From Haliotis cracherodii (lineage: Eukaryota): a stretch of DNA of 64,000 bases. The DNA is taken from assembly GCF_022045235.1 (NCBI RefSeq), contig NW_027266286.1:55242001-55306000 (forward strand), in the 5' to 3' direction. Shown in pieces: positions 3,755 through 61,931 of the stretch (the stretch's first letter is position 1; the number at the start of each line of letters is the position of its first letter). Below the pieces are notes generated by a model, which searched no databases, was not told where the DNA came from, and saw nothing but the letters and a program-made list of their open reading frames with translations. Both the position numbers and the translations under genes were made by a program.

Positions 3755-4094
3755 GAAGTCCTTTCCATGGATCCTGAATGGTATGAAGACTCTGATGTCG
3801 TCCTATCAGAGGATGAAGAAGACGAAGATGATGATGAAACGGACGACAGTTATCTATTAGCAGAAAGTCAGCCTGAAAGTGGAGAAGTGTTGAGTGGCAA
3901 AAGAGTCCCTGTGAAGGATGATGAAACCTCCGTCTGTGAGACACGCAGTGACTCTGACAGTGGAGAAGCTGCAGTGTCTTCAGACATTGTTCATACTCCC
4001 CCCCGGAATCTGCCAACAGATCAACTATGTGAAGGTCGCAGGTTGTTGACAGATGGTGGTAATGCTCTTGATGGAAGAGTCTTGCACCCTGGAA
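3755..4094 (+). CDS. Gene A first coding exon, acidic and probably disordered (MDPEWYEDSDVVLSEDEEDEDDDE...)
   Basis: catcag| acceptor at 3754, ATG at 3767, strong donor a|gtaagt at 4095, phase 1, coding-like composition. Confidence 0.65.
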
Positions 4095-16000: not shown

Positions 16001-19000
16001 TTTGTGGAGGGCAGCTGAACGTGGTAACACTGAGATGGTCAGACTCCTTGTGGAGAAAGGTGTTGATGTAAACACGACAGATACATTCTGGACATCAGTT
16101 TTGCAGAGGGAAGCTGAAGGTGGTAACACTGAGATGGTCAGACTCTTGGTGGACAAAGGAGTTGATGTAAATATACCAGATACATTCTGGACATCAGTCT
16201 TGCGGAGGGCAACTGAGATCGTCAGACTCCTTGTGGGGAAAGGTGTTGATGTAAACACGACAGATACATTCTGGACATCAGTTTTGGAGAGGGCAGCTGA
16301 ACGTGGTAACACAGAGATGGTCAGACTCCTTGTGGAGAAAGGTGTTGATATAAATATACCAGATACATTCTGGACATCAGTTCTGCAGAGGGCAGCTGAA
16401 CGTGGTAACACCGAGATGGTCAGACTCCTTGTGGAGAAAGGTGTTGATGTAAACACACCAGATACATTCTGGACATCTGTTTTGGAGGTGAACGCTGAAC
16501 TTGGTAACACTGAGATGGTCAGGCTCCTTGAGGAGAAAAGTGTTGATGTAAATATACCAGATACATTCTGGACATCATGTTTGCAGAGGGCAGCTGAACG
16601 TGGTAACACAGAGATGGTCAGACTCCTTGTGGAGAAAGGTGTTGATGTAAATATACCAGATACATTCTGGACATCAATTTTGTGGAGGGCAGCTGAATGT
16701 GGTAACACAGAGATGGTCAGGCTCCTTGTAGAGAAAGGTGTTGATGTAAATATACCAGATACATTTTGGATATCAATTTTGTGGAGGGCAGCTGAACGTG
16801 GTAACACAGAGATGGTCAGGCTCCTTGTGGAGAAAGGTGTTGATGTAAATATACCAGATACATTTTGGACATCAATTTTGTGGAGGGCAGCTGAACGTGG
16901 TAACACAGAGATGGTCATGCTCCTTGTGGAGAAAGGTATTGATGTAAATATACCAGATACATTTTGGACATCAATTTGGTGGAGGGCAGCTGAACGTGGT
17001 AACACAGAGATGGTCAGGCTCCTTGTGGAGAAAGGTGTTGATGTAAACATAACAGATACATTCTGGACATCATTTTTGCGGAGGGCAGCTAAACGTGGTG
17101 ACACTGAGATGGTCAGAATCCTTGTGGAGAAAGGTGTTGATGTAAATATAGATACATCCTTGACATCAGTTTTGTGGAGGGAAGCTGAACGTGGTAACAC
17201 TGAGGTCGTCAGACTCCTTCTGGAGAATGGTATTGATGTAAACACACCAGATACATTGTGGACATCACTTCTGCAGAGGGCAGCTGAACATGGTGACACA
17301 GAGATGGTCAGACTCCTTGTGGAGAAAGATGTTGATGTAACTATACCAGATACATTCTGGATATCAGTTCTGCAGAGGGCAGCTGAACGTGGTAACACTG
17401 AGATGGTCAGACTCCTTGTGGAGAAAGATGTTGATGGGAATTTACCAGATATATTCTGGACATCATTTTTGCAGAGGGTAGCTGAACGTGGTAACACTGA
17501 GATGGTCAGACTCCTTGTGGAGAAACGTGTTGATGTAAATATACCAGATACATTCTGGACATCAGTTTTGGAGGTTGAAGCTGAAGATGGTAACACTGAG
17601 ATGGTCAGACTCCTTGTGGAGAAAGGTGTTGATGTAAATATACCAGATACATTCTGGACATCAGTTCTGCAGAGGGCAACCGAACGTGCTAACACCGAGA
17701 TGGTCAGACTCCTTGTGGAGAAAGGTGTTGATGTAAATATACCAGATACATTCTGGACATCAGTTCTGCAGAGGGCAACCGAACGTGCTAACACCGAGAT
17801 GGTCAGACTCCTTGTGGAGAAAGGTGATGATGTAAATATACCAGATACATTCTGGACATCAGTTCTGCAGAGGGCAGCTGAACGTGGTAACACAGAGATG
17901 GTCAGACTCCTTGTGGAGAAAGGTGTTGATGTCAACACACCAGATACATTCTGGACATCTGTTTTGGAGGTGAACGCTGAACTTGGTAACTCTGAAATAG
18001 TCAGGTTCCTTGTGGAGAAAGGTGTTGATGTAAATATACCATATACATTCTGGACATCATGTTTGCAGAGGGCAGCTGAACGTGGTAATGCAGAGATGGT
18101 CAGACTCCTTGTAGAGAAAGGTGTTGGTGTAAATATACCATATACATTCTGGACATCATGTTTGCAGAGGGCAGCGGAACGTGGTAATGCAGAGATGTTC
18201 AGACTCCTTGCGGAGTATGGTGTTGATGTAAATATACCAGATATATTCTGGACATCAATTTGGTGGAGGGCAGCTGAACGTGGTAACACTGAGATGGTCA
18301 GGCTCCTTGTGGAGAAAGGTGTTGATGTAAATATACCAGATACATTTTGGACATCAATTTTGTGGAGGGCAGCTGAACGTGGTAACACAGAGATGTTCAG
18401 GCTCTTTGTGGAGAAAGGTGTTGATGTAAACATAACAGATACATTCTGGACATCATTTTTGCGGAGGGCAGCTAAACGTGGTGACACTGAGATGGTCAGA
18501 ATCCTTGTGGAGAAAGGTGTTGATGTAAATATAGATACATCCTTGACATCAGTTTTGTGGAGGGAAGCTGAACGTGGTAACACTGAGGTCGTCAGACTCC
18601 TTCTGGAGAATGGTATTGATGTAAACACACCAGATACATTGTGGACATCACTTCTGCAGAGGGCAGCTGAACGTGGTGACACAGAGATGGTCAGACTCCT
18701 TGTGGAGAAAGATGTTGATGTAAATATACCAGATACATTCTGGACATCAGTTCTGCAGAGGGCAGCTGAACGTGGTATCACAGAGATGGTCAGACTCCTT
18801 GTGGAGAAAGGTGTTGATGTAAATATACCAGATACATTCTGGACATCAGTTTTGGAGGTTGAAGCTGAAGATGGTAACACTGAGATGGTCAGACTCCTTG
18901 TGGAGAAAGGTGTTGATGTAAATATAACAGATACATTCTGGACATCATGTTTGCAGAGGGCAGCTAAATGTGGTAACACAGAGATGGTCAGACTCCTTGT

Positions 19001-20603
19001 AGAGAAAGGTGTTGATGTAAACATAACAGATACATTCTGGACATCATGTTTGGAGGTTGAAGCTGAAGATGGTAACACTGAGATGGTCAGACTCCTTGTG
19101 GAGAAAGGTGTTGATGTAAACATAACAGATACATTCTGGACATCATGTTTGCAGAGGGCAGCTGAATGTGGTAACACAGAGATGGTCAGACTCCTTGTAG
19201 AGAAAGGTGTTGATGTAAACATAACAGATACATTCTGGACATCATGTTTGCAGAGTGCAGCTGAATGTGGTAACACTGAGATGGTCAGACTCCTTGTGGA
19301 GAAAGGTGTTGATGTAAATATAACAGATACATTCTGGACATCATGTTTGCACAGGGCAGCTAAATGTGGTAACACAGAGATGGTCAGACTCCTTGTGGAG
19401 AAAGGTGTTGATGTAAACATAACAGATACATTCTGGACATCATGTTTGCAGAGTGCAGCTGAACGTGGTAACACTGATATGGTCAGGCTCCTTGTGGAGA
19501 AATGTGTTGATGTGAATACACCAGAAACATTCTGGACATCTGTTTTGGAGGTTGAAGCTGAACGTGGTAACACAGAGATGGTCAGACTCTTTGTGGAGAA
19601 AGGTGTTGATGTTAACATAACAGATTCCTTCTGGACATCAGTTCTGCAGAGGGCAGATGAACGTGGTGACACAGAGATGGTCAGACTCCTTGTGGAGAAA
19701 GGTGTTGATGTAAACACACCAGATACATTCTGGACATTAGCTTTGCGGAGGGCAGCCGAATGCTGTAACACTGAGATGGTCAGACTCCTTGTGGAGAAAG
19801 GTGTTGATTTAAATATACCAGATACATTCTGGACATCAGTTCTGCAGAGGGCAGATGCACGTAGTAACACTGAGATGGTCAGACTCCTTGTGGAGAAAGG
19901 TGTTGATGTAAACATAACAGACACATTCTGGACATCAGCTCTGCAGAGGGCAGCTGAATGTGGTAACACTGAGATGGTCAGACTCCTTGTGGAGAAAGGT
20001 GTTGATGTAAACATAACAGATACATTCTGGACATCATCTTTGCAGAGGGCAGCTGAATGTGGTAACACTGAGATGGTCAGACTCCTTGTGGAGAAAGGTG
20101 TTGATGTAAATACAGGTATACATGGGCACACACCTCTTTGCAGTGCATCCGTTAATGGACACATTGATATTGTCCGTTTTCTTGTTGAGATTCGGTATGC
20201 CCTTGTCCTTCTGCGCACTGCAGCAGAAAATGACAACATTGAGATAGTCAAGTATCTTTTAGACAATGGGGTTTATCTTTACATAATGAAAACATATGGT
20301 AATTTCCCTCTTTGCACAGAAGTTGCAAATCTACACCTTCAGATTCTTCAGTATCTCGCTAAAAGATGTGTTAATGTGAATATGAAAGATAGTTGCTGGA
20401 ATATACTTGTGTGCACTGTAGTTGCCAATGGACACTCTGAGGTTTTCAAGTATGTTGTTGAGAGTGGTGCTGATGTTAATATGACAGATAGCCATGGCAA
20501 ATCACTAATGTGCATTGCAGCTGAAAAAGGTCATATTGAGATTGTCAAGTATCTTCATCAAAAAGGTGTTCCTGTGAATATCACAAAGGACAATTTCAGA
20601 TAA
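3767..20603 (+). CDS. NLR-like nSTAND3 NTPase-ankyrin repeat protein (gene A). Spliced model: 3767-4094, 4629-4790, 5902-5928, 9832-9927, 11702-11728, 12247-20603
   Basis: The terminal exon follows tttcag| at 12246 and is in frame with the 2758-aa ORF. Walker A GRSGEGKT (12357-12380), Walker B VVLIDDIFG, and IIVSR, GFPQCC, FFTEP and YTFLH motifs are typical of nSTAND3, followed by >55 ankyrin repeats. All upstream exons have AG/GT ends and phase-1 junctions and splice without stops. The terminal exon is near certain; the 5' exon chain is inferred. Confidence 0.85.
4629..4790 (+). CDS. Gene A putative 162-nt exon (KEDCGVQIPEDTVFYTRGRNSHNVFNLSGNTGCVHVTFKENKEQQKKFEIIIHV)
   Basis: Polypyrimidine tract with caag| acceptor, open frame in phase 1-1, weaker donor g|gtattt. 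Confidence 0.5.
5902..5928 (+). CDS. Gene A 27-nt microexon (GDTSVLDS)
   Basis: ttattcag|...cag|gtgagt, phase 1-1, frame-preserving. Confidence 0.6.
5953..7472 (+). mobile_element. DINE-1/HINE-like non-autonomous Helentron-type element with an internal 171-bp tandem array
   Basis: Subterminal inverted repeat atcccccgcca (5958) / tggcgggggat (7441), (GTCC)n microsatellite at 6000-6053, ~5.5 repeats of 171 bp (6060-6972). The element is absent from the duplicate copy of its flanks near 11920. Confidence 0.75.
7700..9748 (+). mobile_element. Decayed CR1/L2-group LINE, 3' part
   Basis: RT remnants (LLFADN at ~8187, KYLGI at ~8399, KFCKLILNIS...ILGECRRFPL) and an aataaa(ctgt)n tail at 9728-9748. 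Confidence 0.8.
8428..8665 (+). mobile_element. SINE family 2 (long central domain) inserted in the LINE
   Basis: cgggtggtcaggctcgctgacttggttg core, (AAAC)n tail, flanked by the direct repeat ttttcatgcaga (~8417 and ~8667). Confidence 0.85.
9832..9927 (+). CDS. Gene A 96-nt exon with RHIM/amyloid-like motif (STSVGVIGPFNSIVDRNITMGINYGSVVQSG)
   Basis: tttacag|...ggcg|gtaagt, phase 1-1. A paralogous exon with the same donor lies at 58516-58602 (-). Confidence 0.75.
10330..10466 (+). mobile_element. 5'-truncated SINE family 1
   Basis: Family-1 body with (ACTC)n tail, flanked by ctcaaccttaga repeats. Absent from the paralogous gene B intron near 58125. Confidence 0.9.
11702..11728 (+). CDS. Gene A 27-nt microexon (ENSILSSLQ)
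   Basis: tttcag|...cagg|gtgaga, phase 1-1. Length and both splice sites are conserved in the paralog at 51424-51450 (-). Confidence 0.75.
11866..11892 (+). pseudogene. Degenerate duplicate of the 5902-5928 microexon
   Basis: ttattcag|gaagggacaaatctgtgttggactca... matches 5894-5928, but the gtgag donor is replaced (cagtcatagg). Confidence 0.6.
15581..20115 (+). repeat. Coding tandem array of ~46 ankyrin units of 99 bp (VDVNIPDTFWTSVLQRAAERGNTEMVRLLVEKG)
   Basis: 99-bp period is directly visible. Two units lack 5 aa and two lack 1 aa. Confidence 0.97.
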
Positions 20604-21292: not shown

Positions 21293-21569
21293 TACTTAAT
21301 ACTGCCATAAAATATACTTTTTAGGTACGTCATAATGATCTGACGTAATGGTGCTGTTCAAATTATCATCATTTCTGCACTAAACACACCTTAGAGTGGT
21401 TTTCGTTAATAAACACATCCTCTGAATATAACCCTTTATATCCCTAATTAGGTAATTATAGTAAGAGAATATCTTTGTTGCAAATACATTATTATTATTG
21501 CCACATTTATTGCACCTGATAATATCTTTATGTGTCATTCATTACTTTAATTTCCTCTTATGCTGTATG

Positions 21570-24500: not shown

Positions 24501-25028
24501 ACAGTTCATAGTAAATATGTCTGTACATTATAAAAACAAAACATAGTATATAGTTCATGGTAAATATGTGTGTTCATTATTAAAACAAAACATAGCATAT
24601 AGTTCATAGTAAATATGTGTGTACATTATTAAATAAAAACATAGTATGCAGTTCATAGTAAAATGGATGTACATTATTAAAACAAAACGTAATATACAGT
24701 TTCTATTAAATATGTATGTACGTTATATAAACAAAGCATAGTTAATAATTCATAGTAGAAATTTGTGTACATTATTAAAACAAAACATAGTATACAGTTC
24801 ATAGTAAATATGTCTGTACATTATAAAAACAAAACATAGTATGTGTGTACTTTATCCAAACAAAATATATTATATAGCTCATAGTAAATATGTGTGTACA
24901 TTATTAAAACAAAACATAGTATGTAGTTCATAGTAAACACGTGTGTACATTGTTCAAACAAAACATGGTACATAGTTCATAGAAAATATGTGTGTACATT
25001 ATTAAAACAAAACAGGATGTAGTTCATA
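21570..25028. repeat. Satellite array, 49-bp unit (atagtaaatatgtgtgtacattattaaaacaaaacatagtatatagttc), ~70 copies
   Basis: Directly visible tandem array with an 880-bp internal block duplication (21841 vs 22721). Confidence 0.97.
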
Positions 25029-45798: not shown

Positions 45799-48700
45799 TT
45801 AATTGTCTGTACTCATGTCAGAAAATCTTCCGATAAGTTCAATCAGTTCACGATCACTGGCACCAAGTTCATCAACATTGAAAAACCTCACGAGTTTCTC
45901 TGCAACAACCTGATGACCTCCACCACTAGCTGCATGTAAGCATGTACCTCCATAGTCATCCTTGCACAGGACATCAGCGCCACATGACAGCAAATGATCA
46001 ACAATATCTGTGTATCCACGGTAACAGGCTATCATTAATGGGGTGGCATTTTTCGGTCCACGCTTATTGATGTAAGATGGTTCATCACCTCCAACAGATG
46101 TAAGAAATTTCACAATGTTGTACCAACCATTGTTGCAGGCCACATATAGACAACCGCCGCCAAGATTGATATCTGCTCCCTTTTTTACTAGTTCCTCTAC
46201 AATGTCCATGTGCCCTTGTTGACAGGCAACCATGATTGGAGTCCAGCCATCTTTAGTGAGAGAATCGATGTTGTGATCAACGCCAAGACAAAGTTGAACC
46301 AAATGGAAAATACCAGATTTTGCTGCAACGTGCAGACTTGTTCTTCTTTTGTTGTCCACCATCTGTATGTCAGCGCCATTGTTCATCAAGAATGTTACCA
46401 TATCAGTATGACTGTTCTGAATAGCATACATTAAGGGTGTTTTCAATAGTGAATTTACACAATTCACAGTGGCTCCTGTTTGTAGAAGCCACTCAGCTGT
46501 TGGAACGTGCCCTTTCATTGCTGCCAAGTGTAGACATGAATTGTTCTCTTGATCGACGGCATCTAAAACAGCATGTCTACGTTTTAGTTCCTTTGCTGTT
46601 TCCAACTTCCCATGCCTGCAAGCACACATTAATGGCGTTCTTCTGAACTTACTACCAACATCTTCAATGTTCATTCCATGATCAAGAAGTATCTTTACAA
46701 TATTGGTTTCTCCCTTCATACATGCAAGATGTAGACATTTGTTTGTAACAGAGACAGAATCTGAGGTGTGTGCTCCATTCTCTAAGAGCAACTTCACGAT
46801 ATCTGAAGCGTAAATCAAAGGTGTTCTTCCATATTCACCACCTTGGTTCAAATCCATAGATTGTCTGAGCAGCAATTCAGCAACGTCAAGGCACCCTCCT
46901 CTGCACGTGAGATGAAGACAGTTGTCACTCTCTTCATCTAATAGTCCTGGAGCTGCTCCCCTGTCAAGTAGCATCTGGGCCAAATCAGCGTGTCCCCGAT
47001 AGCAAGCATGCATGAGAGCTGTCATACCATTTCCCCCAAGAACATCAATTGCAGTGTTGACAGGGTCAAGCAGTATACGCACACATTCTGTAAACCCATT
47101 GGCAGCAGCCACGTGGATTAACATATCTCTGTTGTCACCATATTCTCGAGGGCAGTCTTTGTCTGAGGGCACTGCAGGAGAGGCAATACTTTTTGCTGTA
47201 GAAAGAGATTGAAGATACGGTCTGGTTTTATCTTTGTTATGCAGGATATCCCCGACAGTTGTAGTGGCTATTTTGTCAAACCAAGAGGCAGATTGACCAA
47301 CGAGTTCTTTTAAGTAGCTCAAGTGCAAGTAGCTCAAGTGCCCATGCATGCAGCACCCAAGATAACATTCAAGGATGTCTGATTCACATAGCTGCATTCG
47401 TGGAATGTATTTGCAAAATGCACCTGTGTCCAAATATGATGACCAGAATAAGAATCCTCGATCCTTGTCACGTTGAAACGAAATATTATCTGCTGGAAAG
47501 TAGGAGAAGAGTTTGTCAACCAGGTCCTCAAAGGTAAAACATTGATGTGATAATGAGAGGGACAAATTACCATTAGTAATTTCTCTTCCAAGTCGTCTCA
47601 CAAGATTCTCCGTTAAATCATCTTCAATATTAATAAGGAACGTATTCATATGACCATCTTTTGAGATGCCTGTATTCTTGGTTTCTGAAATCCAAATTCT
47701 GTCAACTATGAACTTTAGACTGCAGTTCTCTAAGGCGACAACAGGGTGTAAATCAATCACAACGCATGCCACAACATCATGAATAGCTGGGTGACTAAAT
47801 TTTGCGCAATTGTTCTTTAATAGCACAATCAGTGTATCTTTTTCGTTTCTTGCAGATTTCCTGATTTCAGCAGGATTGTTAGCGTCTGGCATGATTTCCC
47901 CCATCTGTGATATCTTTTTGTCCAATCCGGAATCCCTTCGCCGTTGAGGATCTAAGAGATCATTTAAGTGTAGACCACCTTCATTGAGTATCATAAGCAG
48001 GAGAACTGCAGCCCTGTACCTTTCTTCATAGCGTGAAAAGATAACAGCTACTACATCATGCAAGTAGATCCACGGTTTCTTAAAAAAATCCAAGGCATTT
48101 CTTTCTAGAGAAGAATTCTTCACAAACAGTTGGCATATGTAAGGAAATCCCAGTGTCGTGTACTCCAGTCTTGCAACTGCTAACATTTCATCATGCGTTA
48201 GATGGAATTGCGATCCTTCCAAATGTTTTTTTAAAATCTGTTCTTTTTCAGTATCACCAAGAGGAGTAGATGTAGTCAGATTTATGACAGGTGACAGCAA
48301 TGAATTTTGGTATTTAATTACCATTTGAGAGACACTATTCCAGACGTTTGTCCGACTGGTCATAATGACCTTCAAAGGCATCACGTCCTTTTCCATTTCC
48401 AAAAGTTGGAAATGATGTTCTAAATATTCAAACATAGCGTCACAACTCTTCACAACATCGGCTGATGATGCAAAAGTACCAAACACATTATCACAAACCA
48501 GTAACGTTTGAGTGGGTGTGTTGTACTTAAAGTTCTCCCATTTATCTACACAAATCACGCGGTGTCCCTCTGCTCTGTATTTTCCTGAGATGTAGCGGGC
48601 CATTGTTGTTTTTCCTGATCCAGGCGAACCACAAATAAATACATGGTCCTTGGTTTGCAGGGCATTCCAGACTTCACGATAAGCCCCAGTTTCTATAAAT

Positions 48701-49549
48701 ATTGTCTCTGCGTATAGCTCCTCAGTTTCATCTGTGATTTAATAGAATGTATGTATTATTAATAAATTTCAGCCAGTAGCAAAGATGCTTCTACAATGGT
48801 ATTGAATTACCATTTTTATTAATGAGTGAGTCAGGTTTTACGCCGCTGTTAGCAATATTCAAGCAATATCACGGCGGGGGACACCACAAATGGACTTCAC
48901 ACATCGTACCCATGTCGGGAATCGAACCCGGGTCTTCGGCGTGACGAGCGAACGTTTTAACCACTAGGCTACCGGACCGCCCCTACCATTTTTATTACCT
49001 TCGAGGGCAAACATATCGGGGTTCATAAAAATCATAGGTGCTCTAGGGTCGCATCACGTCACCAGACAACGCTGTACTGTTTCCGTCATCTGGGCGGCAT
49101 TGTTGACATCATTCGAATATTATTATGACGTCAGATCGGAATGACGTTACTTTAGAAACGGCGTCATAGCTGAGGATTGTTGACGTCATTCGACAAATTG
49201 TGGTTTCGCTGCTGTTGCGACTTGCTGTTCTTGTAGGTACACACTACAATTCGTCTCTGTATCTAGACATCATCTTCGGTAATAAATAGAACATTATATT
49301 CGTGTTCAGGTCATACTATGTTTACGACACTCGTGCCTGAATTCCAGTATTGCTCTCGCTCGGAAATACCGTAATTTAGACACTAAACATAGTATGAAAT
49401 TAACACTCATATAATATCCTCTATATACATGTTTATAAATATATACCAGCTGACAAACATTCCTGTGCATCACTGACAATCATGGGTTATATTAAATATA
49501 CGCAAACAAAGGACGATCTTTCTACTGATTAATATATTGATGTCCATGA

Positions 49550-49607
<58 letters not shown>

Positions 49608-52600
49608 TGAACCGCAAAAGAAACATCACCATAGATAGATATATGAGAAACCTTATTTGTCCAAACACTGTAAACATACTCTGAGACATATTAAAAAGAT
49701 CAAACTGATCAACAAGGTTTAAATTAAAGTGTCAAACACTAGTCTCTGAGAAAATGGCATCACAAATCAGTATCTCGTATGTCCGCCCTGTGCATTGATG
49801 ATTGCCGTGCAACGTCGATACATTGAATTGATGAGGCGGTTGATGAAGGGCCATGGGCACTGGAGCCCACACTCTGAGGAACGCCTGACGCAGTTCAGCT
49901 GCAGTTGTCGGCCTTGGTCGGACGTCATTCAGCTGTCTTTGAATCTCGTCCCACAGGTGCTCAATGGGATTTAAATCAGGACTGAGGGCAGGCCACTGCA
50001 TGGTTCTGATGCCATTCTGCTGGAGGAAGTCTCTTGTTGTACTCGCACTGTGGGCACGGGCGTTATCATGCTGAAACTCGTGGTTGCGGCGACGTGCCAA
50101 ATGAGGTATGGCGTGTGGTCTCAAGACTTGATCAATGTACCGAGCTGCTGTAACAACATTGCCTCTCCTTGGACCTATGTTCGGGGAGACCACAGGGCCG
50201 AGCCTCTGTGCAAGATCAATTCCACCCCACACCATGATGCTGGGACCACCCCACGGGTCTCTCTCAACAACACAAGCATCCGAATATCGTTCCCCACGGC
50301 GTCGCCGACTCTCGTCGGAGAAGAGGGTTCTTCTCCACTGCTAGTTGCGCTGATGGTGGTGCTGTGTTGCCCACTGATGACGGTCCCGGTGATGACGTGG
50401 TGTCAGAATGCGTCCTCGATGTGGCCTGTGACAGTGGAGGGGTCTGCTTGTCAATCGTCGAAGCACAGTGTCCACACTGATGTGTCGCTGGTGTGTCCCC
50501 ATGGTCTGTCGAACAGTTTCCGCAGCAGTAACAAAGCGATCTCGAAGATGTTGTCGCACAATCTGACGATCTTGACGTCGGGTGGTGACCCTTGGTCTAC
50601 CACAACGTGGTCGGTCATCTATAGTGTTGGTGGTCTGGAACTGTTGCTGGAACCTGTTTATGGTCTTTACGTGGACTTGAAATGCATTGGCTACTTGCCG
50701 GGCGGTTTGTCCAGCTTGCAATCGCCCAAGGGCTTGGTGTCGCTGATTTCTTGTCAATCTTGGCATGTGGTAGCAATTCAATAACGAATGAATGTTATCC
50801 GATCTGGGTGGATTTTTACAGGGCAAGAAATGGGGGAATTTGCACGGAACTCACATGCATCGGGTTACCATGGCCGTTGCCGTGATGCGTTTGGGCGATC
50901 GGTTTTATTCTCATCTGCTTTGTTTTTTTATCATCAAATTTCCGGACAAGGTAATGTTAAATTTTAGAAACTTGGAAAAAAATAACCCAGACATTTAAAT
51001 GACAACTATTCATGCAATGTTACTTGGGGTGGCGTTTCTTTTGCGGTTCAATATATACATACATCCTAATTTTATATATCCACACACATATTTTACATCA
51101 TTTACACATATATTACATTATACATATCCACACACACCAAATAATTCACACGAAAGTAAAATAACATTTGTCAATAATTAATAAATTACGCATGTGCATA
51201 CATATGCATCAATTTTCTATGCATCGTTTTTTATCAGTATTATTTTCGTATTCCAAATTATGAAACACTGAATTTAACGACTACATTCTCCAATTCATGG
51301 TTTTGGTCCTTTGGGAATTGGACTCAAACTTGGCACTTGTACAAAATCTTCATTCCCAATTTATAAGAAAATCACTATACATTTTTGTGAGAGAGTACAA
51401 CTGACCAGAGAAAACCATCTCACCCTGAAGGCTGCTTGAAGCTGAATCTTCTGAAACGAATCATAAAAATGTTGACAGTAATGATAGCATATGAAAACTT
51501 TCGAAGATAACACTTGCACCAGGGAGAAGACGGGAGGATAAATATACAGGCATCGGCACTATTTCAATCCAGAAGACATGATATATAATAGAATGAGGAA
51601 TTAATGCTTTATACTAACGTCATTAAGAATGATAGATAACTAATTCGTGAGGGAGTGAGTGCGGTAGGTGGTAGTGGCGCGTAACAGTATTCCAGTACTA
51701 TCAAGGTGGCAGTTGAATGTTGGAAGAAGTTTCATACTATTTTATTCATCGTATGAATTGACATCATTGGATGCTTGTCAAACTCCGTGATGTACACAGA
51801 GACATTGATATGTACACGTAACACTTTCAGCCTCAATACAGATCAAGAGACACCCCGTTGATCAGGAAGGAAATGTTTCCACTGAAGTAGTCAGGATTTT
51901 CAAATTTCTGAACGATGGCAAGATACCAAATAGTAACAAATGGGTTTCATTGTTCAGTGTTCGTATTTGACAGTTTAAAAAACTTACAACAACTATACAT
52001 AAATCTTATTCACATCTCCTTACCTTACGACATCAAAAAGACAGCGCTCCGCGAGGGTCTTGGATGAAGAAAGTTGTTTCACATTCCACTCCCTGGCTTT
52101 TATAAGGTCCATCACCGCTGTCATGTGACCTTGATGACAAGTCACCTTCCTCACATCACTGCCTGTCGATCGAGCTTAAAAAACATACTTTTGAGGTTTC
52201 TGAAGCCTACGTGGGGAGGCAAGTCTGCGGTCGGTGGGTCCTTAAACGTAGTAATGCAGGATAAGTATACACATGTAAAACATATTTAGAATTTACTAAT
52301 TTTTACTTATCCTGCATTACTCCTTTATGCATCTGTATCGGACAGTTTGGAGGCAGGAAACCTTCCGAAAGTCCGAAACCTTATAATTCACACCCCAAAC
52401 AATGACACATGTTTGTCATTAATCCGTGAGGCAGAAATAGCTTAGGAAAAACGATAGGGTCGTTCAATCTTCTTACAGAAGGAACGTAAGAATAAGAGGG
52501 TAGATCCCTATACATATTCAGTAATAAAGAAATACTAGCTAAACAGGTAATTCTTTACCAAAGAGCCTGGTAGAATAGATTGTCTAATTTTCTTCCACTG

Positions 52601-55600
52601 GCCGAGTCTCGGCGACCTGCATGGGAAGTAGACTGGCTCTGTATAGGGTGAGTTCATTATTTGCGTCGAGGGTTGGTTACCTACTGGGCTCCTACCAGAG
52701 GGCCGAAATCTCGCTCGCCTTCGACGTCCTCGAGAACCACAGCGTGAAGATAATGACAAGCGAAAACTGTGTCGGACCTCCAAAAACATCCTTCCATGAT
52801 AGTTTTAATAGAGCAGATACTATGTAACGCCATGGTCGAGGCTTACGCCCTCATAAGACTCGCGAGGATTATTCGCTCTCGGCGGATCAAGTTTGGCCAT
52901 ATCATAAGCCTGAAGGATGACTGCACGTAACCATAGAGATATGGTGTTGCGACTAACTTCGATCGTGGACGTAGGAGATAAAATAACCGTTTCCTCGAGC
53001 CACGCCTAGTTTTGGAACGGGGGATGAAAAATCGAAGTGCTCGCGCCGGGCACAAGAGAAGTTCACCCTCATCTTCGACTCCCACAATCTTCGATATAGG
53101 TGGGATGGTGAAGGAACGATCGGGTTGACCTGGTAATTGATATTTTGCTATAAAATCCCAGGTCAACCTGAGATGTACCGCTCAGTGCGTCCCATGCTCA
53201 AAACGGACCCGGGTGACGTCGATCGCATGTAGCTACCTCACCGTTGCCTCCGTGGCTAATGCCATGAGAAAAAATGTTGTCATGGTGAGGTCATAAAATG
53301 AAGATGCATTGAAGGGGGTCCTCACAAACCTCGAAGTACCACGTTCAATTCCCAAGCAGGGAACTTGGCCTTCTGATCCTCAAGCCTAAATAAGTGTAGT
53401 AGGGCCTGGAGTTCCGGCACCTTGGTCAGTCTTACTAGTTTCTGGAACAGCCAACACTGAGTGAAGTGCAACCAAATCCGTAGTAATTGTGCTACCTTTC
53501 AAGTGTTTCTTGGTACGCAAATGTAGGAGGTATTCGGTTAAGAATTGTTGTGACGCAGTCATGAGATCTTGTTTTTTGCCTTGCAAAGAGTCTCAAATGA
53601 TCACCACTTGTCATTGTATAATCCTCTGGTAGGAGGACGATGGGCTCAAACTATAGCTTTAGCTGCCCGTGCCGAATAGCCCTTCGCACTTAACGCCTTT
53701 TAAGACAAACCAAGTGTGCAGATGAAACCTGTCTGGCATTGGGTGAGGCAATTTGCTGTGAGGGTTGATGAGTAGGTTGGACAACTGTGGGAGGGGTAGT
53801 GGATCGTCTTCTGCTAGACTTCTGAGCTCAACGAACCACCCTCTCGCCGGCCACTAGGGCACAATCTCTTGTCTCTTTGATCTTTTGTATCACCTTGGGA
53901 AGTAGAACAAATGGCGGTAAGGCGTACGCTTTTAGGCCGTCCCAAGGGATGCTGAATGCATCCACTGCCCAAGCCTGCGGATCCGATAAGGGGGGAGACA
54001 TGCTTCATAAGTTGGTGGTTTTGGCACGTAGAAAACAAGTCGATGGCACGGTGACCGAACTTCTAAAGCAGTAACTGAAATGCTTCTGTGTGAAGTTTCT
54101 ACTAGTGCAGGTGACAAGAGGCATAAAATCTTTAGCCATCTGTACCTTGGTACTGATAGGAGATCCTGGTCTGTCTGGAATAGGCCTCCTATCAACTGGA
54201 ACTGATAACAAGGAGTTAACTCCGACTTCGCCTCGTTGATTATCTATCCCAGTTGATAAAGTAGCCTTCTGGTAAATTCCCGATGGCGTACTAACTTTGG
54301 TACGTCTGGATGACACAGGAGACAGTCATCTGTATACGACTCGAACCAAATGTTCCTCAGGTGTAAAATCGCAGTTATTGACTTCATTATGCGTGTATAG
54401 AGCCACGGGGCCACTGAAATGCCAAATGGGTGAACGCTCCATTGGTAGTGAACTCCATTGAACTGGAACCTGTGGAACCTGCGGTCGGAGGGATGGATGG
54501 GTATATGCAAGTGGAGACTGATAAAGGATTCGAACGCCTTTCTGCTGGTTCTGGCTCAACGTGGTAAGGTGGAAAAAAGGTGGACGCTTCAGGTAACGTT
54601 CTTGAGAGATTGTTGATCATACTCATCTTGTCTGAGTCCTTCTTGGGTACCAGGCAGATGTGAGGATAAAACCACGGTGTTAACTCTGCGGTGTAAACAA
54701 TCTATAGAGCTCCATTTACCAACAGTATGTCTTATTGGCTTTTAATAGCAGATGTTGCTTTCTTGGATATTTCCAAGGCAGGGGAGCTGCAGTCAACGAT
54801 GCGGTTACCTTTACGTCTCCTCGTCTAGATGTAGTACGTTGAGTACGTAATCGTCCTTGAGAATCGTCAAATTTTTCCAAAACAGATTCAGTCTCCCGCT
54901 GAAGGAAATCGACAATTGGTCCGCCTGGGGGCGGGAGTTCCCAGACGTGACTGTACAACACTTCAGTGTTTACCCCTCTTATCATCTCTTTTTATAATTG
55001 CCTGACCTGCCAGCCTGCTAGACTATGAGAGACATGCTCTGGAGCCTTGAGCGCTGTCTCATCCCTAGCGTAATTGGAAACTTTGGCGTGCGTGTCTGTG
55101 ATTTGTTAATGGAACAGAGAAGTAGATGACCAAGGTTGAGGTAGCAGCCTGCGCTTGAACTCAGAGTCCCAGTTGGAAAGCGCTAAATAACCAAGTCTGC
55201 GTGTGACGGTAATCTGATGCTGTTGGAAATCCACCATAGTTTGGAAATGATCTAATCAGATAGGGTTATCCTCTGATAGATCCTGATCCACTGCACGCGT
55301 TGAACGCTAGTGCTGACAAAGGTTTCAGTTCCCGCCTGATTTCCGTTTCTGTGAACGCAGCAAATCTGGTATCTTGTACCTTAAGGGTGGTTTGCCTTGA
55401 CGAGCCTGCCATCCTTTGTATGTCCTCACTAAACTATGAGCTTGGAGGGCGCCTCTGACACGAGACGGTTCTTGCCCTAAGCCGAGATGCATATTCCATT
55501 CCACAGAGAAATCGCCATACTCGCCATTTGATAAGTCCGACGAGTCATAGCGATGTTGACACACTCGCCCGGACGGCAATCAGGTTTTGCTCCGGCGCAT

Positions 55601-58600
55601 AGCGCCTCCTCTATGAGAAGGCTTTGATGATCTGCTTTGTAGTAAGAAGTCATGTGCCGATTTCCACGTACGCGCTTGCGTACTAGCGCTGCCCAACGAT
55701 GTATGCGCTGTACCAGTACAGGCCTGCTGCAAAATACGTTTGTGAATGACCTGTCTATAATTTGCAAAACTCGCTGGAGAGAGAGGTGCACAAATATTAC
55801 ATTTAAAGTTTGGAGAGCAAATCTGCGAGCATGCCAAACAACGTAGATGAGGATCCTTGGAATATTTTTTCCACGACAATTAGTACAACGCGCAAGCATA
55901 AGTTACGCAAAATAGAGAATTGTTGATGAGATTGAGTTGGAAGATTGTCATAGAATTAAACAATATTTTATCGGCAGATATTCTTACGAGTTGAAAGTGT
56001 ATACAAATATTGATACACGCAAACTCTATGTAACACAAAAGCTACTAGTATTTACAAACATATGAATATGTTATACATACCTAGCTGAGAATTGTAAACA
56101 ATTTGACTACCCTTGCAGGCAAACAATTGTAACACAAATCAAAATTGAGATATACAACGAACACGTGGAGGGAAAGAAAACAAACTACACACTAGTGAAA
56201 GTAATATGAAGAGAGTACATCTCCTATCGCAAATAAAATTTAGAATTATACTCTTCAAAAAAAGAAACTTGAAAAAGATGTAAAACCACTTTTTGACAAA
56301 TATCTAAAATAATTACATTAAATGAGAACCAAATAAGTCAAACAGAAAGATGATGTGTCTATAATTCGTGAAAACACATGCAAATCACATAAACGTAGTG
56401 TTTGGGGATCAATTTTACAGCTTCATCCAATCGCAACCAGCTGTAAAAAACATGCAGCACAGGATCCTGCATTTAGGCATGTAGGCCCCTCTGCTGAATG
56501 GGTATAAAAATCCACATCAACGACTGTTTATACAGTCCTTATAACGGCAGTAGAGGCGGTGACAGAATGCCAAGACTGAATGCAGCTCAACGGAACAACG
56601 CCATTAAGAGATTACAAGCTGGAGCAACTTAGCAAGAAGTGGCCAGGCACTTTGGTGTATCCAGACAGACAATCTCCGCACTGTGGACCCGATACAACAA
56701 CACCAACAGAGTTGACGACAGACCAAGGTCAGGAAGACCAAGGGTGACAACCCAAGCACAAGATCGATACATCTGGCTGCAACACCTCCGAGACCGCACT
56801 ACCACAGCCACGTCTACAACCACACAGATCCCTGGGGTACGCAGAATATCAGATCAAACGGTATGCAACAGGGACTTTTTGCACGAAGACCTGTTCGACG
56901 TCATGTGTTGACCCCACGTCATCTGGCGGACAGTCTGCTTTGGTGCCAACAGAGGGTTAGATGGGCACGTGCAAGGTGGAGAAATGTACTGTTTACTGAC
57001 GAGTCACGTTTCCTACACACACATGCTGATGGGCACGCACGTGTCTACAGACGTCAGGATGAAGGTTACGCCACCAACTGTGTGCAGCAGGTTGTCCCAT
57101 TTGGCGGTGGGAGTGTCATGGTATGGGCCGGAATTCATCACGGTGGTAGGACACCTCTCGTGCATGTGGCAGGTGCATTGACAGGTGTGCGTTACAGAGA
57201 CTTGATCCTACAGCCTTACGTTCTTCCTCACATCAACGTTCATGCCGGACAGTTCCAGCAGGACAACGCTCGACCGCATATTGCAAGTGTTTGTCAGGAC
57301 TTCTTACAGAACAACAACATCCAGACATTACCTTGGCCAGCCCGGTCACCAGATTTGTCGCAGAAGGAATCCACCGCCCCAAACACTTCCGATGCAAGTG
57401 GTGGGCACAACCGAAACTGACATTTTCTGTACCCCTGTGACATTAACTGTATCGTGTACGTGTGTCTGTCTAGGTGACACGATTAATGTTTTGAACATTG
57501 TGTACATTGATCTTCAAACATTGTTTCAATTATGGTTTCTGTGTCCTATTTTGAAACAATCGCATTATATTACATTTTGAAAATCAGTGTCAAGTTTCTT
57601 TTTTTGAAGAGTATATATCTGAAGCTGAAAGTCTAAAATTATCCAATCTATAGAGCTCCGCTGAGACATGTCCTTGCTGGATCGCGACAGACAGTGATCA
57701 GAGGAAGGTGACTTGTCATCAAGGTCACATGACAGCGCCGATGGTCCGTATTAAAGCAAGGGAGTGGAATGTGAAACAAATTTCTTCACCCAAAACCGTC
57801 GCGGTGCACTGTCTTTTTGTTGTCGAAAGGTAAGCAGTGAATGCATTAAGGAGTAATGCAGGATAAGTAAAAAATATTCCAATTAGGTTTATTGGAAGAT
57901 TCAACTTATGGAATCCATGTACATATGTAGTTACAAAACTGTTTTGTTTCCCCAAAAAGACATATGAAAGGATCGATTTCTCATTTCGTCTTTTGGTCAT
58001 TACTGTCAAAGTTTATAGGTATAGAAAAGTGAAGATACAATGAGGTCAGGTTACTCCAAATAAATCATTCTTTCTCAATTCAGACTGGCACTAGCAAGAT
58101 TTTGTAGCAGTTCATGCCATCAAAAGTTGAGACTGGTTGTTATTACAACATACATAGAGAATAAAGGTGGTGTATACATTGCAAAAATAATTATGAAGAA
58201 GATTAATACTATATTTTATTAGTATCTGAAAAATATAATTTTCTTCATAAAAAAATGTTAATATTCTCCTATCAACATCAAATGTATAAAGCCATCAAAC
58301 ACTCTGCCATGTTTGTCTACTATGCAAACCATTTGAGAGAGTCGTGTTAGTTTCAGGTTTAATAATACAGTACCTAGTGTGCATGGTTTATCTTGGCAAC
58401 CACAATATATCAATGTTTCAAACATATGATAATGAACCACCACTGTGAATATGGGCCGATGACCTACATTCTTCTTGACTAAAAAGACTTACAGACATGT
58501 GCTAAGCGAACTTACCGCCATATTGTACAACAGACCCATAGTTCATGCCAATGACAATGCTCTGGTTCACATTACTGTGAGATGCCCCACTGACATTGAG

Positions 58601-59063
58601 AGCTGTGAATGTAAATAAAATCCATAAAATATGTTTCATAATTATTAAGTAAAATCCTTGATTGAATAATATATCGTAACAGTAACAGTGTAACCACTAT
58701 TGATTACAATAGCAAACTTAAACCCATCAATATGATCAAGATGTATATGGCCACGTGTAGCACACGTACAAACCGTGTATAAAACATAAAGGTTTAATTC
58801 CTTGAATAATACGTATGACTTAAGTAAATTCCCACTACATCGTTGATATATCTTATGTCATTTTTGTTGATAAGTTACTAGCAGCAAATGTGGAGATGCA
58901 GGGTCAAGGTAGTAGTTCCACTTCTAACATGCTTACCTGCAGATGCATCCGACTGTCTCAACGAATCTCCTCCTGTAGCGTCTGTTGGTATGCTGTCCTC
59001 ACATTCCCCATGTGCCGTACTCGTACATCCAGCAGGTTGCAGTGTACCGTCTGGCGCATCCAT
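45799..59063 (-). CDS. NLR-like nSTAND3 NTPase-ankyrin repeat protein (gene B). Spliced model: 59063-58937, 58602-58516, 51450-51424, 48731-45799
   Basis: Acceptor cacag| at 48732 (-) extends the 934-aa ORF in frame with (D)ETEELYAETIFIETGAYREVWNALQTKDHVFICGSPGSGKTT, containing Walker A. LLVCDNVFG, VIMTSR, GFPYIC, FFKKP and KFSHP motifs follow, then ~13 canonical ankyrin repeats. All junctions are phase 1. Confidence 0.85.
48823..48984 (-). mobile_element. SINE family 1
   Basis: Family-1 sequence flanked by taccatttttatta repeats. Confidence 0.92.
49552..49604. repeat. (TA)n microsatellite
   Basis: Directly visible; abuts a Tc1 terminus. Confidence 0.97.
49605..51053 (-). mobile_element. 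Tc1-family transposon (second family), defective, in a gene B intron
   Basis: TIRs tactgaaccgcaaaagaaac / gtttcttttgcggttcaata with TA flanks. MPRLTRNQRHQALG...RPRCGRPRVTT, QHDNARAH and SPDLNPIEHLW motifs. Stop codon and frameshifts present. Confidence 0.95.
51424..51450 (-). CDS. Gene B 27-nt microexon (EDSASSSLQ)
   Basis: tttcag|...cagg|gtgaga on the - strand. Paralog of 11702-11728. Confidence 0.75.
52012..57874 (-). mobile_element. DIRS1-type tyrosine-recombinase retrotransposon, decayed, in a gene B intron
   Basis: Gag-like Cys/His motif DPHLRCLACSQICSPNFKCNIC (55580-55879), RT HIPIHP...PFGISVAP...YTDD (54244-54510), recombinase LLCPARALRFF (52843-53166). Inverted terminal repeats at ~52020-52175 and ~57680-57833; internal complementary region at 52300-52332. 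Confidence 0.9.
56249..57613 (+). mobile_element. Tc1-family transposon nested in DIRS1; same family as 31657-33182
   Basis: TA-flanked TIRs tactcttcaaaaaaagaaacttga, FTDES and QQDNARPH motifs, in-frame stop at 56630 and deletions near 57360-57395. Confidence 0.95.
58516..58602 (-). CDS. Gene B 87-nt exon with RHIM/amyloid-like motif (LNVSGASHSNVNQSIVIGMNYGSVVQYG)
   Basis: ttcacag|...ggcg|gtaagt, phase 1-1. Paralog of 9832-9927. Confidence 0.75.
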
Positions 59064-61410: not shown

Positions 61411-61766
61411 TCCGATATCAAATTTGTCCTCCTTTTTACCAGCTGACATGTATTGCACCACTGCTTGAAATATTACACGACAAGGCTGCCTCCTTTTTTA
61501 ACTCCTACCGACGCGCTCTTTTCTTAGCCAATGGTTAATCTCCATTTCACAATGATAAAAGTTGCCAGGAAGCTTCGCGTGTTTATGACCTCAATATACC
61601 AAGATTAGTTTCAAGTAGTTTACACTCTAACGATCAGTACAAGCTGCACTGAAAGGGACTTTGGTGACATTTCTTTGCTGGGGAATGCATTGTCTGCTAA
61701 CGACGACCTCCAGTATGTACAGACCAAAGGCTAAACTTCCGCTTCCATGAGGTCGGCTTCAACAAA

Positions 61767-61931
61767 GTGAGTGAGTGAGTATGCTTTTACGCCGCTTTTA
61801 GCAATATTCCAGCAATATCACGGCGGGGGACACCAGAAATTGGCTTCACACATTGTACCCATGTCGGGAATCGAACCCGGGTTTTCGGCTTGACGAGCGA
61901 ACGCTTTAACCACTAGGCTACCGGACCGCCC
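61767..61931 (-). mobile_element. SINE family 1
   Basis: Family-1 sequence flanked by the ggcttcaacaaag target-site duplication. Confidence 0.93.

What the first reader, a model, noticed from the sequence alone, without database searches (positions are those of the whole stretch)
51298..58692. Introns conserved, giant coding exons not: shared 5' cassette on unrelated sensor exons
Seen: gene A 9750-10800, 11060-11250 and 11545-11850 align by eye with the reverse complement of 57880-58692, 51765-52012 and 51298-51595, at high identity in non-coding DNA. The adjacent NTPase exons share only family motifs, and the first coding exons are unrelated. This is the reverse of normal paralog decay. Inference: the amyloid-like exon plus microexon block was recently transferred between anciently diverged nSTAND3-ANK subfamilies, giving combinatorial assembly of signalling module and sensor exon.
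Basis: partly seen in the sequence, partly recalled or inferred. Interest (0 to 1): 0.8.

Follow-up and report, generated by a model that had tools for sequence, protein, structure and literature searches.

The report
Mini-exon cassette copied between abalone receptor genes
In black abalone, a 2.1-kb piece of intron carrying two tiny coding exons was copied from one NLR-like immune-type receptor gene into the last intron of a distantly related neighbour, a clear but not unprecedented case of exon shuffling.

Summary
A 9748-11851 (+) aligns with B 58691-57877 plus 52012-51300 (-) at 83% identity (K2P 0.19; BLAST E to 1e-67). The adjoining giant exons are both nSTAND3 + ankyrin but share only about 20% of residues. 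The first coding exons are unrelated.

- 5.9 kb of the 7.4-kb B interval (52013-57876) is a nested transposon inside an intron.
- Only two stretches of the block are exons in NCBI models: e1 (87-96 nt) and e3 (27/45 nt), both phase 1-1.
- The block is not a transposon. The genome holds three copies (A, B, and C about 97 kb left of B), all in this cluster.

The cluster is two head-to-head gene pairs, (C,A) and (B,A2), made by one tandem duplication (dS about 0.07-0.08). The cassette copy in A is older (K 0.18).

In A the cassette sits next to a LINE-like element, between two diverged copies of the A-type's own last microexon unit. A2 lacks it. More distant relatives of the A type also go straight from microexon to giant exon, so the transfer ran from B-type to A-type.

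A 155-nt tract identical between A and C suggests later gene conversion. Splicing of the cassette in gene A could not be tested. An amyloid role is unsupported. The kind of event is known; this is a new example.

The parts
9748..11851 (+). Cassette copy in gene A (block A). It is intron, e1, intron, e3 and 123 nt of the next intron. Two later repeat insertions interrupt it.
   Evidence: BLASTN against B and C. Three-way alignment. Only three copies in the genome.
9832..9927 (+). e1 in A: 96 nt, phase 1-1, with AG acceptor and GTAAGT donor. It encodes STSVGVIGPFNSIVDRNITMGINYGSVVQSG.
   Evidence: Read from the sequence. Homologous to the e1 of NCBI models P0001, P0004, P0003 and P0002. The last 37 nt plus donor are identical to C.
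11702..11746 (+). e3 in A: 27 nt (to 11728, donor GTGAGA) or 45 nt (to 11746, donor GTCAGT). Phase 1-1 either way.
   Evidence: Sequence. Both lengths appear in NCBI models: P0002 has the 27-nt form, and P0001, P0003 and P0004 have the 45-nt form.
10332..10463 (.). Young SINE-like insertion in A only. It lies between two copies of a 12-bp stretch that occurs once in B (58120-58131), which looks like a target-site duplication.
   Evidence: Genome copies at 97-99% identity, out of 4508 first-look candidates. Absent from B and C. The A matches on either side of the insertion overlap on B 58120-58131.
10261..10547 (+). Tract in which A and C are identical over 155 aligned nt (10261-10331 plus 10464-10547), while B has private changes. 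This is a candidate A-C gene-conversion tract.
   Evidence: Measured over the wider interval 10240-10570, A-unique sites are 3/183 inside against 170/1216 outside (Fisher p 5e-8), and B has 6 private changes. No Rfam hit and no fold signal.
7675..9747 (+). LINE-like dispersed repeat 'TE-L', with a nested repeat at about 8428-8666. It exactly fills the space between X1 and the cassette.
   Evidence: Five other copies start at the base equivalent to 7675. Ten or more copies end at 9746-9749 with variable 5' truncation. Homology to B and C starts at 9745-9748.
5893..7674 (+). X1, the upstream copy of the A-type's last-intron unit (5893-5958 plus 7472-7674). It is split by later insertions, including the 171-bp tandem repeat at 6060-6972. 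It holds microexon 5902-5928 (GDTSVLDS).
11857..12128 (+). X', the downstream diverged copy of unit X. It holds a 33-nt microexon at 11866-11898 whose donor is weakened from GTGAGT to GTGTTT.
   Evidence: Alignment of X1, X' and the A2 unit. Site patterns: X1=A2, X' differs, 57 sites; X'=A2, X1 differs, 28; X1=X', A2 differs, 13.
12247..20603 (+). Giant exon of gene A: nSTAND3 NTPase, linker and about 46 ankyrin repeats. The acceptor is in phase 1.
   Evidence: ORF, Pfam, acceptor sequence.
57877..58691 (-). Cassette copy in gene B, upstream part. It holds e1 at 58602-58516 (87 nt). The ancestral acceptor AG has become AT, and the NCBI model uses an in-frame AG 9 nt downstream.
51300..52012 (-). 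Cassette copy in gene B, downstream part. It holds e3 at 51450-51424 (27 nt) or to 51406 (45 nt).
52013..57876 (.). Transposon nest inside the e1-e3 intron of B, shared with C and absent from A. It is a degraded element bearing a reverse transcriptase, with 153-nt inverted ends (52016-52168 and 57685-57837). A Tc1/mariner-like copy is nested in it at 56259-57625. B has also lost about 310 bp at the left junction that C keeps.
   Evidence: Inverted repeats. Pfam RVT_1, DDE_3 and HTH hits. Dozens of copies genome-wide at 75-83%. Shared with C. The nested copy is 92-95% identical to 31644-33167.
58937..59063 (-). E0, the first coding exon of B (MDAPDG...DASA), with its donor in phase 1. It is unrelated to A's exon 1.
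   Evidence: NCBI model P0001. Sequence.
45799..48731 (-). Giant exon of gene B (nSTAND3 + ankyrin), with its acceptor in phase 1. The e3-to-giant intron holds a Tc1-like element (about 49600-50900) and a SINE (48823-48984).
   Evidence: P0001 is 100% identical.
3767..4754 (+). Native 5' coding exons of gene A: exon 1 (3767-4094) and exon 2 (4629-4754), which carries the A-type motif GRNSHNVFNLSGNTG. The exon 2 donor is AA where A2 has GT.
   Evidence: tblastn of P0013 and P0002. Comparison of splice sites between A and A2.

Best explanation
The pattern 'similar introns, dissimilar exons' is a mosaic of segments of different ages. It is not reversed decay.

Shown:
- The locus (Haliotis cracherodii, contig C23) holds four nSTAND3-ankyrin genes in two head-to-head pairs, C(-)/A(+) and B(-)/A2(+).
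- B/C-type genes are built E0, e1, e3, giant exon.
- A-type genes are natively built exon 1, exon 2, X microexon, giant exon.
- All of these introns are in phase 1.

Inferred history:
1. A 2.1-kb stretch of a B/C-type ancestor was copied at the DNA level into the last intron of the neighbouring A-type gene. The stretch ran from 84 bp upstream of e1 to 123 bp downstream of e3. In A it now lies directly after a LINE-like element and between two copies of the roughly 270-bp X unit.
2. The whole gene pair was then tandemly duplicated.
3. The A2 copy lost the cassette, probably by recombination between X1 and X'.
4. B and C had meanwhile gained a transposon nest in the e1-e3 intron.
5. A short tract was later homogenised between A and C.

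Because e1 and e3 are symmetric phase-1 exons dropped into a phase-1 intron, gene A can in principle add the B-type N-terminal peptide to its own N-terminal motif without breaking the reading frame.
For: Identity and breakpoints:
- Block identity, K2P distances and alignment.
- The left breakpoint coincides with the 3' end of TE-L. The right breakpoint lies 5 nt before X'.

Not a transposon: three copies only.

The exons are real. NCBI models P0001 (B) and P0004 (C), and H. rufescens P0003 and P0002, contain e1 and e3 joined to the giant exon. Phases were read from the sequence.

Depth of the subfamily split: 20% amino-acid identity. The nearest other paralogue is 37% identical to A and 47% identical to B.

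Polarity:
- A2 lacks the block although it is 91% identical to A at the nucleotide level.
- Distant A-type relatives P0014, P0015 and P0016 also run from an X-like microexon straight into the giant exon.
- B-type relatives P0005-8 have an N/V-rich motif at the e1 position.

Order of events:
- The block tree is (A,(B,C)), with K 0.18-0.19 against 0.068.
- dS is 0.083 for A-A2 and 0.06-0.08 for the B-C NTPase part.
- The duplicons are syntenic: 33181-61091 matches -69648..-36976, and 2828-31122 matches 67364-87391.
- X' is the outlier among X1, X' and the A2 unit.

Later exchange: a 155-nt tract is identical in A and C (p 5e-8).

Constraint on A's copy: the e1 core and its donor are identical between A and C, and the AG/GT sites are intact.
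Against: - No read evidence shows that gene A includes e1 and e3. The only runs available were short contigs of uncertain kind, and no e1/e3/giant-exon joint was among the rows shown.
- No NCBI protein for gene A turned up in either search.
- A's exon 2 donor is lost and the X' donor is weakened.
- The mechanism of insertion is unresolved. A 270-bp flanking duplication and an abutting LINE 3' end fit no single textbook mechanism.
- If A2 lost the cassette by X1/X' recombination, the crossover must lie in the last 20 bp or so of X, which is somewhat unlikely.
- The A=C tract could instead be a constrained element that decays only in B.
Confidence: 0.72

Rival explanations
1. The cassette is ancestral to both subfamilies. 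Recurrent interlocus gene conversion confined to this segment keeps it similar (concerted evolution of the 5' module) while the giant exons diverge freely. No insertion event is needed.
For: A tract identical between A and C shows that exchange between the inverted copies may occur. Identity along the block is very uneven, from 63% to 100%. Gene conversion acting on one module but not another is documented for zebrafish NLR-B30.2 genes (PMC4852459).
Against: A2 and the distant A-type relatives P0014-16 have no cassette and join the X-type microexon directly to the giant exon. In A the block sits between duplicated X units and abuts a LINE end, which are signatures of insertion. The e1 peptide and the block DNA occur only three times in the genome, although it holds about 100 or more nSTAND3 exons.
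Confidence: 0.1
2. The A copy is a silent passenger. The DNA was duplicated into A's intron but e1 and e3 are not spliced into A's mRNA, or gene A is itself decaying. In that case there is no combinatorial protein.
For: No NCBI protein model for gene A was found. The exon 2 donor GT has become AA, and the X' donor is weakened. A2 lost the cassette and still has a full model, P0013. e1 divergence between A and B/C is not significantly different from that of the flanking intron (Fisher p 0.2-0.4).
Against: e1 and e3 in A keep open frames and canonical AG/GT sites. The e1 core (INYGSVVQSG) and its donor are identical to C over 37 nt, against a background divergence of about 16%. The giant ORF of 2,785 codons is intact. 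An in-phase GT lies 36 nt downstream of the lost exon 2 donor and is absent in A2.
Confidence: 0.3
3. The block is part of a transposable element, or was carried by LINE 3' transduction. On the second view, TE-L read through into the flanking e1-e3 DNA at a donor locus and retrotransposed it into gene A.
For: The TE-L 3' end (9746-9749) abuts the first base of the block exactly, and TE-L is in the same orientation. The whole insert lies between direct repeats.
Against: The block itself has only three copies, all in this gene cluster. There is no poly(A) or other tail at its 3' end, and the homology to B runs through CCAAAAC. The flanking duplication is about 270 bp, far longer than typical target-site duplications. 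B and C have no TE-L upstream of the block. The e1-e3 intron is retained.
Confidence: 0.08

Closest known systems
Zebrafish NLR-B30.2 (NLR-C) family: gene conversion acting differently on separate exons (Howe et al. 2016, Open Biol 6:160009; PMC4852459)
   Same: Large clustered NLR-type family with one giant NTPase exon and small single-domain exons. One module is shared across groups whose NTPase domains are deeply diverged. Exchange between physically close genes. Positive selection on a small module.
   Different: There the shared module is the C-terminal B30.2 sensor, and the evidence is statistical over hundreds of genes. Here it is an N-terminal two-exon cassette with still-alignable introns, a defined insertion site, an 'empty' sister gene, and nSTAND3 rather than NACHT NTPases.
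Classical intron-mediated exon shuffling of symmetric phase 1-1 exons (Gilbert/Patthy model; recalled from general knowledge, not from a paper read here)
   Same: The transferred exons are symmetric phase 1-1, they landed in a phase-1 intron, and the breakpoints are intronic.
   Different: Classical cases are ancient and inferred from the phase statistics of folded domains. Here the event is young enough that 83% of intron bases still match, and the exons encode short low-complexity peptides, not a folded domain.
Exon shuffling in brown-algal ROCO candidate immune receptors (PMC11378527; title and abstract only)
   Same: Phase-compatible small exons give combinatorial variety in STAND/ROCO-type candidate immune receptors.
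   Different: There the LRR sensor exons are shuffled or alternatively spliced. Here an N-terminal cassette moved between subfamilies.
L1-mediated 3' transduction as a route to exon shuffling (Moran et al. 1999; recalled from general knowledge)
   Same: A LINE 3' end directly abuts foreign exon-bearing DNA, and the whole is flanked by direct repeats.
   Different: No poly(A), a 270-bp flanking duplication, the intron retained, and no LINE at the presumed donor. These defining features were tested and not met.

Membership tests
nSTAND3 NTPase-ankyrin receptors (Pfam PF20720 + Ank) | Match to the PF20720 HMM above the gathering score at the start of the giant exon | tested here: met
   A scores 80.8 bits and B 71.3 bits against a cut-off of 27.2.
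nSTAND3 NTPase-ankyrin receptors (Pfam PF20720 + Ank) | Walker A P-loop, and C-terminal ankyrin repeats as the presumed sensor | tested here: met
   GRSGEGKT in A and GSPGSGKT in B. Ank, Ank_2 and related Pfam hits.
Intron-mediated exon shuffling | Homology between donor and recipient starts and ends inside introns | tested here: met
   The left end is 84 bp upstream of e1 and the right end 123 nt downstream of e3. The flanking sequence is unrelated.
Intron-mediated exon shuffling | The transferred exons are symmetric and match the phase of the recipient intron | tested here: met
   e1 is 96 nt (87 nt in B) and e3 is 27 or 45 nt, all phase 1-1. The X microexons and both giant-exon acceptors are in phase 1.
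Intron-mediated exon shuffling | Donor and recipient genes are otherwise not close paralogues | tested here: met
   20% amino-acid identity in the NTPase region and no BLASTN hit. A sister gene, A2, lacks the insert.
Intron-mediated exon shuffling | The shuffled exons are included in the recipient's mRNA | tested here: inconclusive
   Read laying returned only short contigs of uncertain kind, and no listed joints at e1, e3 or the giant exon. No NCBI protein for gene A was found.
Dispersed transposable element | Many copies, mostly outside the gene family | tested here: not met
   Only A, B and C hold the block. The only dispersed hits are the nested SINE, a 150-bp repeat and TE-L outside the block.
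LINE 3' transduction | Poly(A) or another tail at the end of the transduced DNA, a short target-site duplication, and a LINE upstream of the donor copy | tested here: not met
   No tail at 11851. The flanking duplication is about 270 bp. B and C have no TE-L. Only the LINE-end adjacency is met.
Interlocus gene conversion | A bounded tract with identity far above the background between two non-allelic copies, while a third copy evolves at the background rate | tested here: met
   A and C are identical over 155 nt (10261-10547). Over the wider interval 10240-10570, A-unique sites are 3/183 against 170/1216 elsewhere (p 5e-8), and B has 6 private changes.
RHIM / amyloid signalling motif | Match to a known amyloid-motif family, and a partner protein carrying the same motif | tested here: not met
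   No Pfam family at E up to 10 for the e1 of A or B. The e1 peptide was found only in A, B and C. Earlier follow-up s1-845429 reports failure of RHIM tests, which I did not repeat.

The most novel reading that the evidence does not exclude
The two cassette copies lie as inverted repeats inside head-to-head receptor genes. They may act as a recombination switch: crossing-over between them would invert the intervening DNA and swap the whole 5' (promoter plus N-terminal) halves between an A-type and a B-type receptor.

The H. rufescens model P0002 is exactly the predicted product. It combines A-type exon 1, exon 2 and X microexon with B-type e1, e3 and giant exon.

Together with the fast-evolving e1 (dN above dS) and a gene A that could carry two different N-terminal motifs, this would be a germline mix-and-match system for the effector-side tails of invertebrate NLR-like receptors.
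Probability: 0.2. Interest if true: 0.65.

Novelty: new member of a known kind. Interest (0 to 1): 0.42.

Why it matters
Lineage-specific NLR-like (STAND) repertoires in invertebrates are thought to diversify by domain and exon shuffling. That is usually inferred from domain architectures, not from events in which breakpoints, donor, recipient and an empty sister site are all still readable.

This locus supplies such a case in a mollusc. It shows that the short N-terminal tail exons of nSTAND3-ankyrin receptors behave as movable, frame-neutral cassettes. It also gives concrete junctions to test by RNA sequencing.

It does not change the general picture. Module-specific exchange among clustered immune receptor genes is already documented in fish and plants, and the proposed signalling role of the peptide remains unsupported.

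Tried and rejected
- **Reads for splicing of gene A.** The look-up of sequencing runs found no run on record as RNA. The single read-laying run on 7000-12999 was dominated by repeat contigs and showed no informative joints. Nothing can be concluded from it.
- **Structured RNA in the ultra-similar intronic tract.** Rfam gave nothing (one chance hit, E 0.99). The fold z-score was +0.72. Rejected.
- **'Giant exon' inside 52013-57876.** Rejected. It holds only broken ORFs with RVT_1, DDE_3 and HTH matches, and belongs to a dispersed family.
Not present in any NCBI model.
- **A-type orthologues in other abalone proteomes.** None above 33% identity within the two length ranges searched. This is limited by the tool's length filter.
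- **e1 peptide elsewhere in the genome.** Only A, B and C were found, but a 31-residue query has low sensitivity.
Full report
**Observation**

A 9748-10331, 10464-10585 and 10656-10799 match the reverse complement of B 58691-57877. A 11060-11265 matches 52010-51741, and A 11550-11851 matches 51594-51300. Identities run from 76% to 92%, with E-values down to 1e-67.

In a three-way alignment with a third copy (see below), the block is 83.3% identical A-B (K2P 0.189), 84.0% A-C (0.180) and 93.5% B-C (0.068).

The giant exons next to the block give no nucleotide match and share 81/406 residues over the NTPase region. Both match Pfam nSTAND3 well above threshold and carry ankyrin repeats.

**Organism and gene models**

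NCBI names on identical or near-identical proteins identify the genome as Haliotis cracherodii. This agrees with an earlier scan note.

The NCBI model of gene B (P0001, 100% identical over the giant exon) reads:
- E0: MDAPDG...DASA
- e1: ALNVSGASHSNVNQSIVIGMNYGSVVQYG
- e3: EDSASSSLQ(GEMVFS)
- giant exon: DETEELY...

The model of copy C (P0004) and the H. rufescens orthologue P0003 have the same structure.

Mapped to the window, B's exons are:
- E0 59063-58937
- e1 58602-58516
- e3 51450-51424, or to 51406
- giant exon 48731-45799

The homologous positions in A are:
- e1 9832-9927
- e3 11702-11728, or to 11746
- giant exon 12247-20603

All have canonical AG/GT sites and all are in phase 1.

I translated and searched exons one at a time.

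**What fills the B interval**

Between the two halves of block B lies 52013-57876. It has 153-nt inverted ends, only broken ORFs, a reverse-transcriptase match, and a nested Tc1/mariner-like copy. It belongs to a family with dozens of copies at 75-83% identity.

The e3-to-giant intron of B holds another Tc1-like element and a SINE. A carries its own young SINE (10332-10463) and a 150-bp repeat.

**Not a dispersed repeat**

Whole-genome searches with the full block, its left part and its right part find it only three times. These are A, B, and a copy C at C23:55196355-55202334, which is window coordinates -45645 to -39666. The e1 peptide is likewise found only there.

**Cluster structure**

B and C are about 93% identical over more than 16 kb, including the giant exon and the transposon nest. 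Gene A has a sister, A2, whose giant exon starts at window 71536. A2 is 86% identical to A in protein and about 91% in nucleotides, and its NCBI model is P0013.

The order along the contig is C(-), A(+), B(-), A2(+), which makes two head-to-head pairs. The duplicons are syntenic: 33181-61091 matches -69648 to -36976, and 2828-31122 matches 67364-87391.

Synonymous divergence is 0.083 for A-A2 and 0.06-0.08 for the NTPase part of B-C. One tandem duplication of the pair explains both.

**Insertion site in A**

A2 has no block. Relative to A2, gene A carries an extra 5.9 kb (5957-11856) between two copies of a roughly 270-bp unit X. The unit contains the A-type's last microexon (GDTSVLDS...):
- X1 is 5893-5958 plus 7472-7674.
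- X' is 11857-12128.

The extra DNA is made of three parts:
- later repeat insertions within X1
- one complete copy of a LINE-like repeat, TE-L (7675-9747), with its canonical 5' end and the 3' end shared by the family
- the block

TE-L ends at 9746-9749 and homology to B and C begins at 9745-9748. The block ends 5 nt before X'.

**Polarity**

A2 joins an X-type microexon directly to the giant exon, and so do distant A-type relatives in other abalones (P0014, P0015, P0016, about 33% identity). All of these carry the A-type's own motif (GRN..N..N..NTGV) in an upstream exon. B-type relatives (P0005-8, 46-48% identity) have an N/V-rich motif at the e1 position. The cassette is therefore native to the B-type and foreign to the A-type.

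**Order of events**

Block A is equidistant from B and C and 2.5 times more distant than B is from C. The copy in A therefore predates the pair duplication, and A2 must have lost it.

The three-way X comparison agrees, because X' is the long branch. X1 and the A2 unit agree against X' at 57 sites. X' and the A2 unit agree against X1 at 28 sites. X1 and X' agree against the A2 unit at 13 sites.

There is one weakness. Loss by X1/X' recombination needs a crossover in the last 20 bp or so of X. An alternative is conversion of A2's 5' region by A up to the TE-L breakpoint.

**Later exchange and selection**

Between 10261 and 10547, leaving out the SINE, A and C are identical over 155 nt. In the wider interval 10240-10570 B has six private changes. 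A-unique sites there are 3/183, against 170/1216 elsewhere (p 5e-8). No Rfam family or stable fold explains the tract. Gene conversion between the inverted A and C copies is the simplest reading.

e1 evolves fast. B and C differ at 14/93 sites in e1 against 11/298 in the flanking intron (p 3e-4). dN/dS is 1.5 for B-C and 4.2 for A against B or C. The numbers are small. The last third of e1 (INYGSVVQSG) is invariant.

**A second combination in another species**

The H. rufescens model P0002 starts with exon 1, which is 87% identical to A's exon 1 (77% to A2's). It continues with exon 2 and the X microexon, and then with B/C-type e1, e3 and a B-type giant exon.

If the model is right, 5' and 3' halves have been recombined differently in the two species. 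An inversion by crossing-over between the inverted cassette copies would produce exactly this.

**What remains open**

Whether gene A expresses the cassette is unknown:
- No RNA run was on record.
No informative joints were among the rows shown.
- No NCBI protein for gene A was found.
- A's exon 2 donor is AA where A2 has GT, although an in-phase GT that A2 lacks lies 36 nt downstream.

The 'amyloid' label has no support. e1 has no Pfam match.

**Comparison with what is known**

Module-specific exchange among clustered NLR genes is documented in zebrafish (PMC4852459). Phase-compatible exon shuffling is a classical model. This locus is a clean, datable molluscan example with nSTAND3 receptors, not a new kind of system.

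**Verdict**

- Observation: confirmed.
- Interpretation: partly supported.
- Novelty: new member of a known kind.
- Interest: about 0.4.

Noticed in passing
window 4744-4797 (compare A2 at C23:55310478-55310560): The donor of gene A's exon 2 is AA (4755-4756) where A2 has GT. A has a GT at 4791, 36 nt downstream and in phase 1, where A2 has AGTA. This may be a compensatory shift of the splice site that would add 12 residues.
   Followed up: partly
window 9832-9927, 58516-58602, and copy C: The first two-thirds of mini-exon e1 change faster than the surrounding intron. Nearly all changes are non-synonymous. The last third (INYGSVVQSG) is invariant, which looks like diversifying selection on a short peptide.
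   Followed up: partly
window 33181-61091 against C23:55172353-55205025: A segmental duplication of about 30 kb at 92-97% identity. It carries gene B/C and also the neighbouring region that another first-stage note (35759-40882) calls a Cbl-like EF-hand-SH2 gene. That gene therefore has a near-identical copy about 97 kb to the left.
   Followed up: no
window 21565-25028 and C23:55320643-55323278: An AT-rich 49-bp satellite (GC about 0.23-0.27) lies directly downstream of gene A. A homologous array follows A2. The arrays are about 80% identical to each other and internally.
   Followed up: no
window 10332-10463 and 2405-2570, 37381-37548, 39763-39929, 48823-48984, 61766-61931: A very young SINE-like family, with genome copies at 97-99% identity out of 4508 first-look candidates for the block query. 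Loose ends of contigs show that full copies continue upstream with a tRNA-like head (GGGTAGCCTAGTGGTTAAAGCG...), so A's copy is truncated at its 5' end.
   Followed up: partly
window 31644-33167 against 56259-57625; also 49600-50900: Three Tc1/mariner-like copies (DDE_3 and HTH matches). Two of them are 92-95% identical, which suggests fairly recent activity of this family in the cluster.
   Followed up: partly
proteins P0001, P0004, P0002, P0003: B is closer to both H. rufescens copies (94%) than to its own paralogue C (91%). The two H. rufescens copies are 96.7% identical to each other. Either the B/C duplication predates the species split with loss or conversion in H. rufescens, or C evolves faster.
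   Followed up: partly
(protein database): No annotated protein of H. rufescens, H. rubra or H. asinina is more than 33% identical to the A-type giant exon. B-type orthologues are 87-94% identical. The A-type lineage may be missing, unannotated or very fast-evolving in the other species.
   Followed up: partly
window 3085-3600 and 6060-6972: Tandem repeats of 89 bp and 171 bp (91-96% identity between copies). The first lies upstream of gene A's first coding exon. The second lies in the intron after the X1 microexon and splits unit X1.
   Followed up: no
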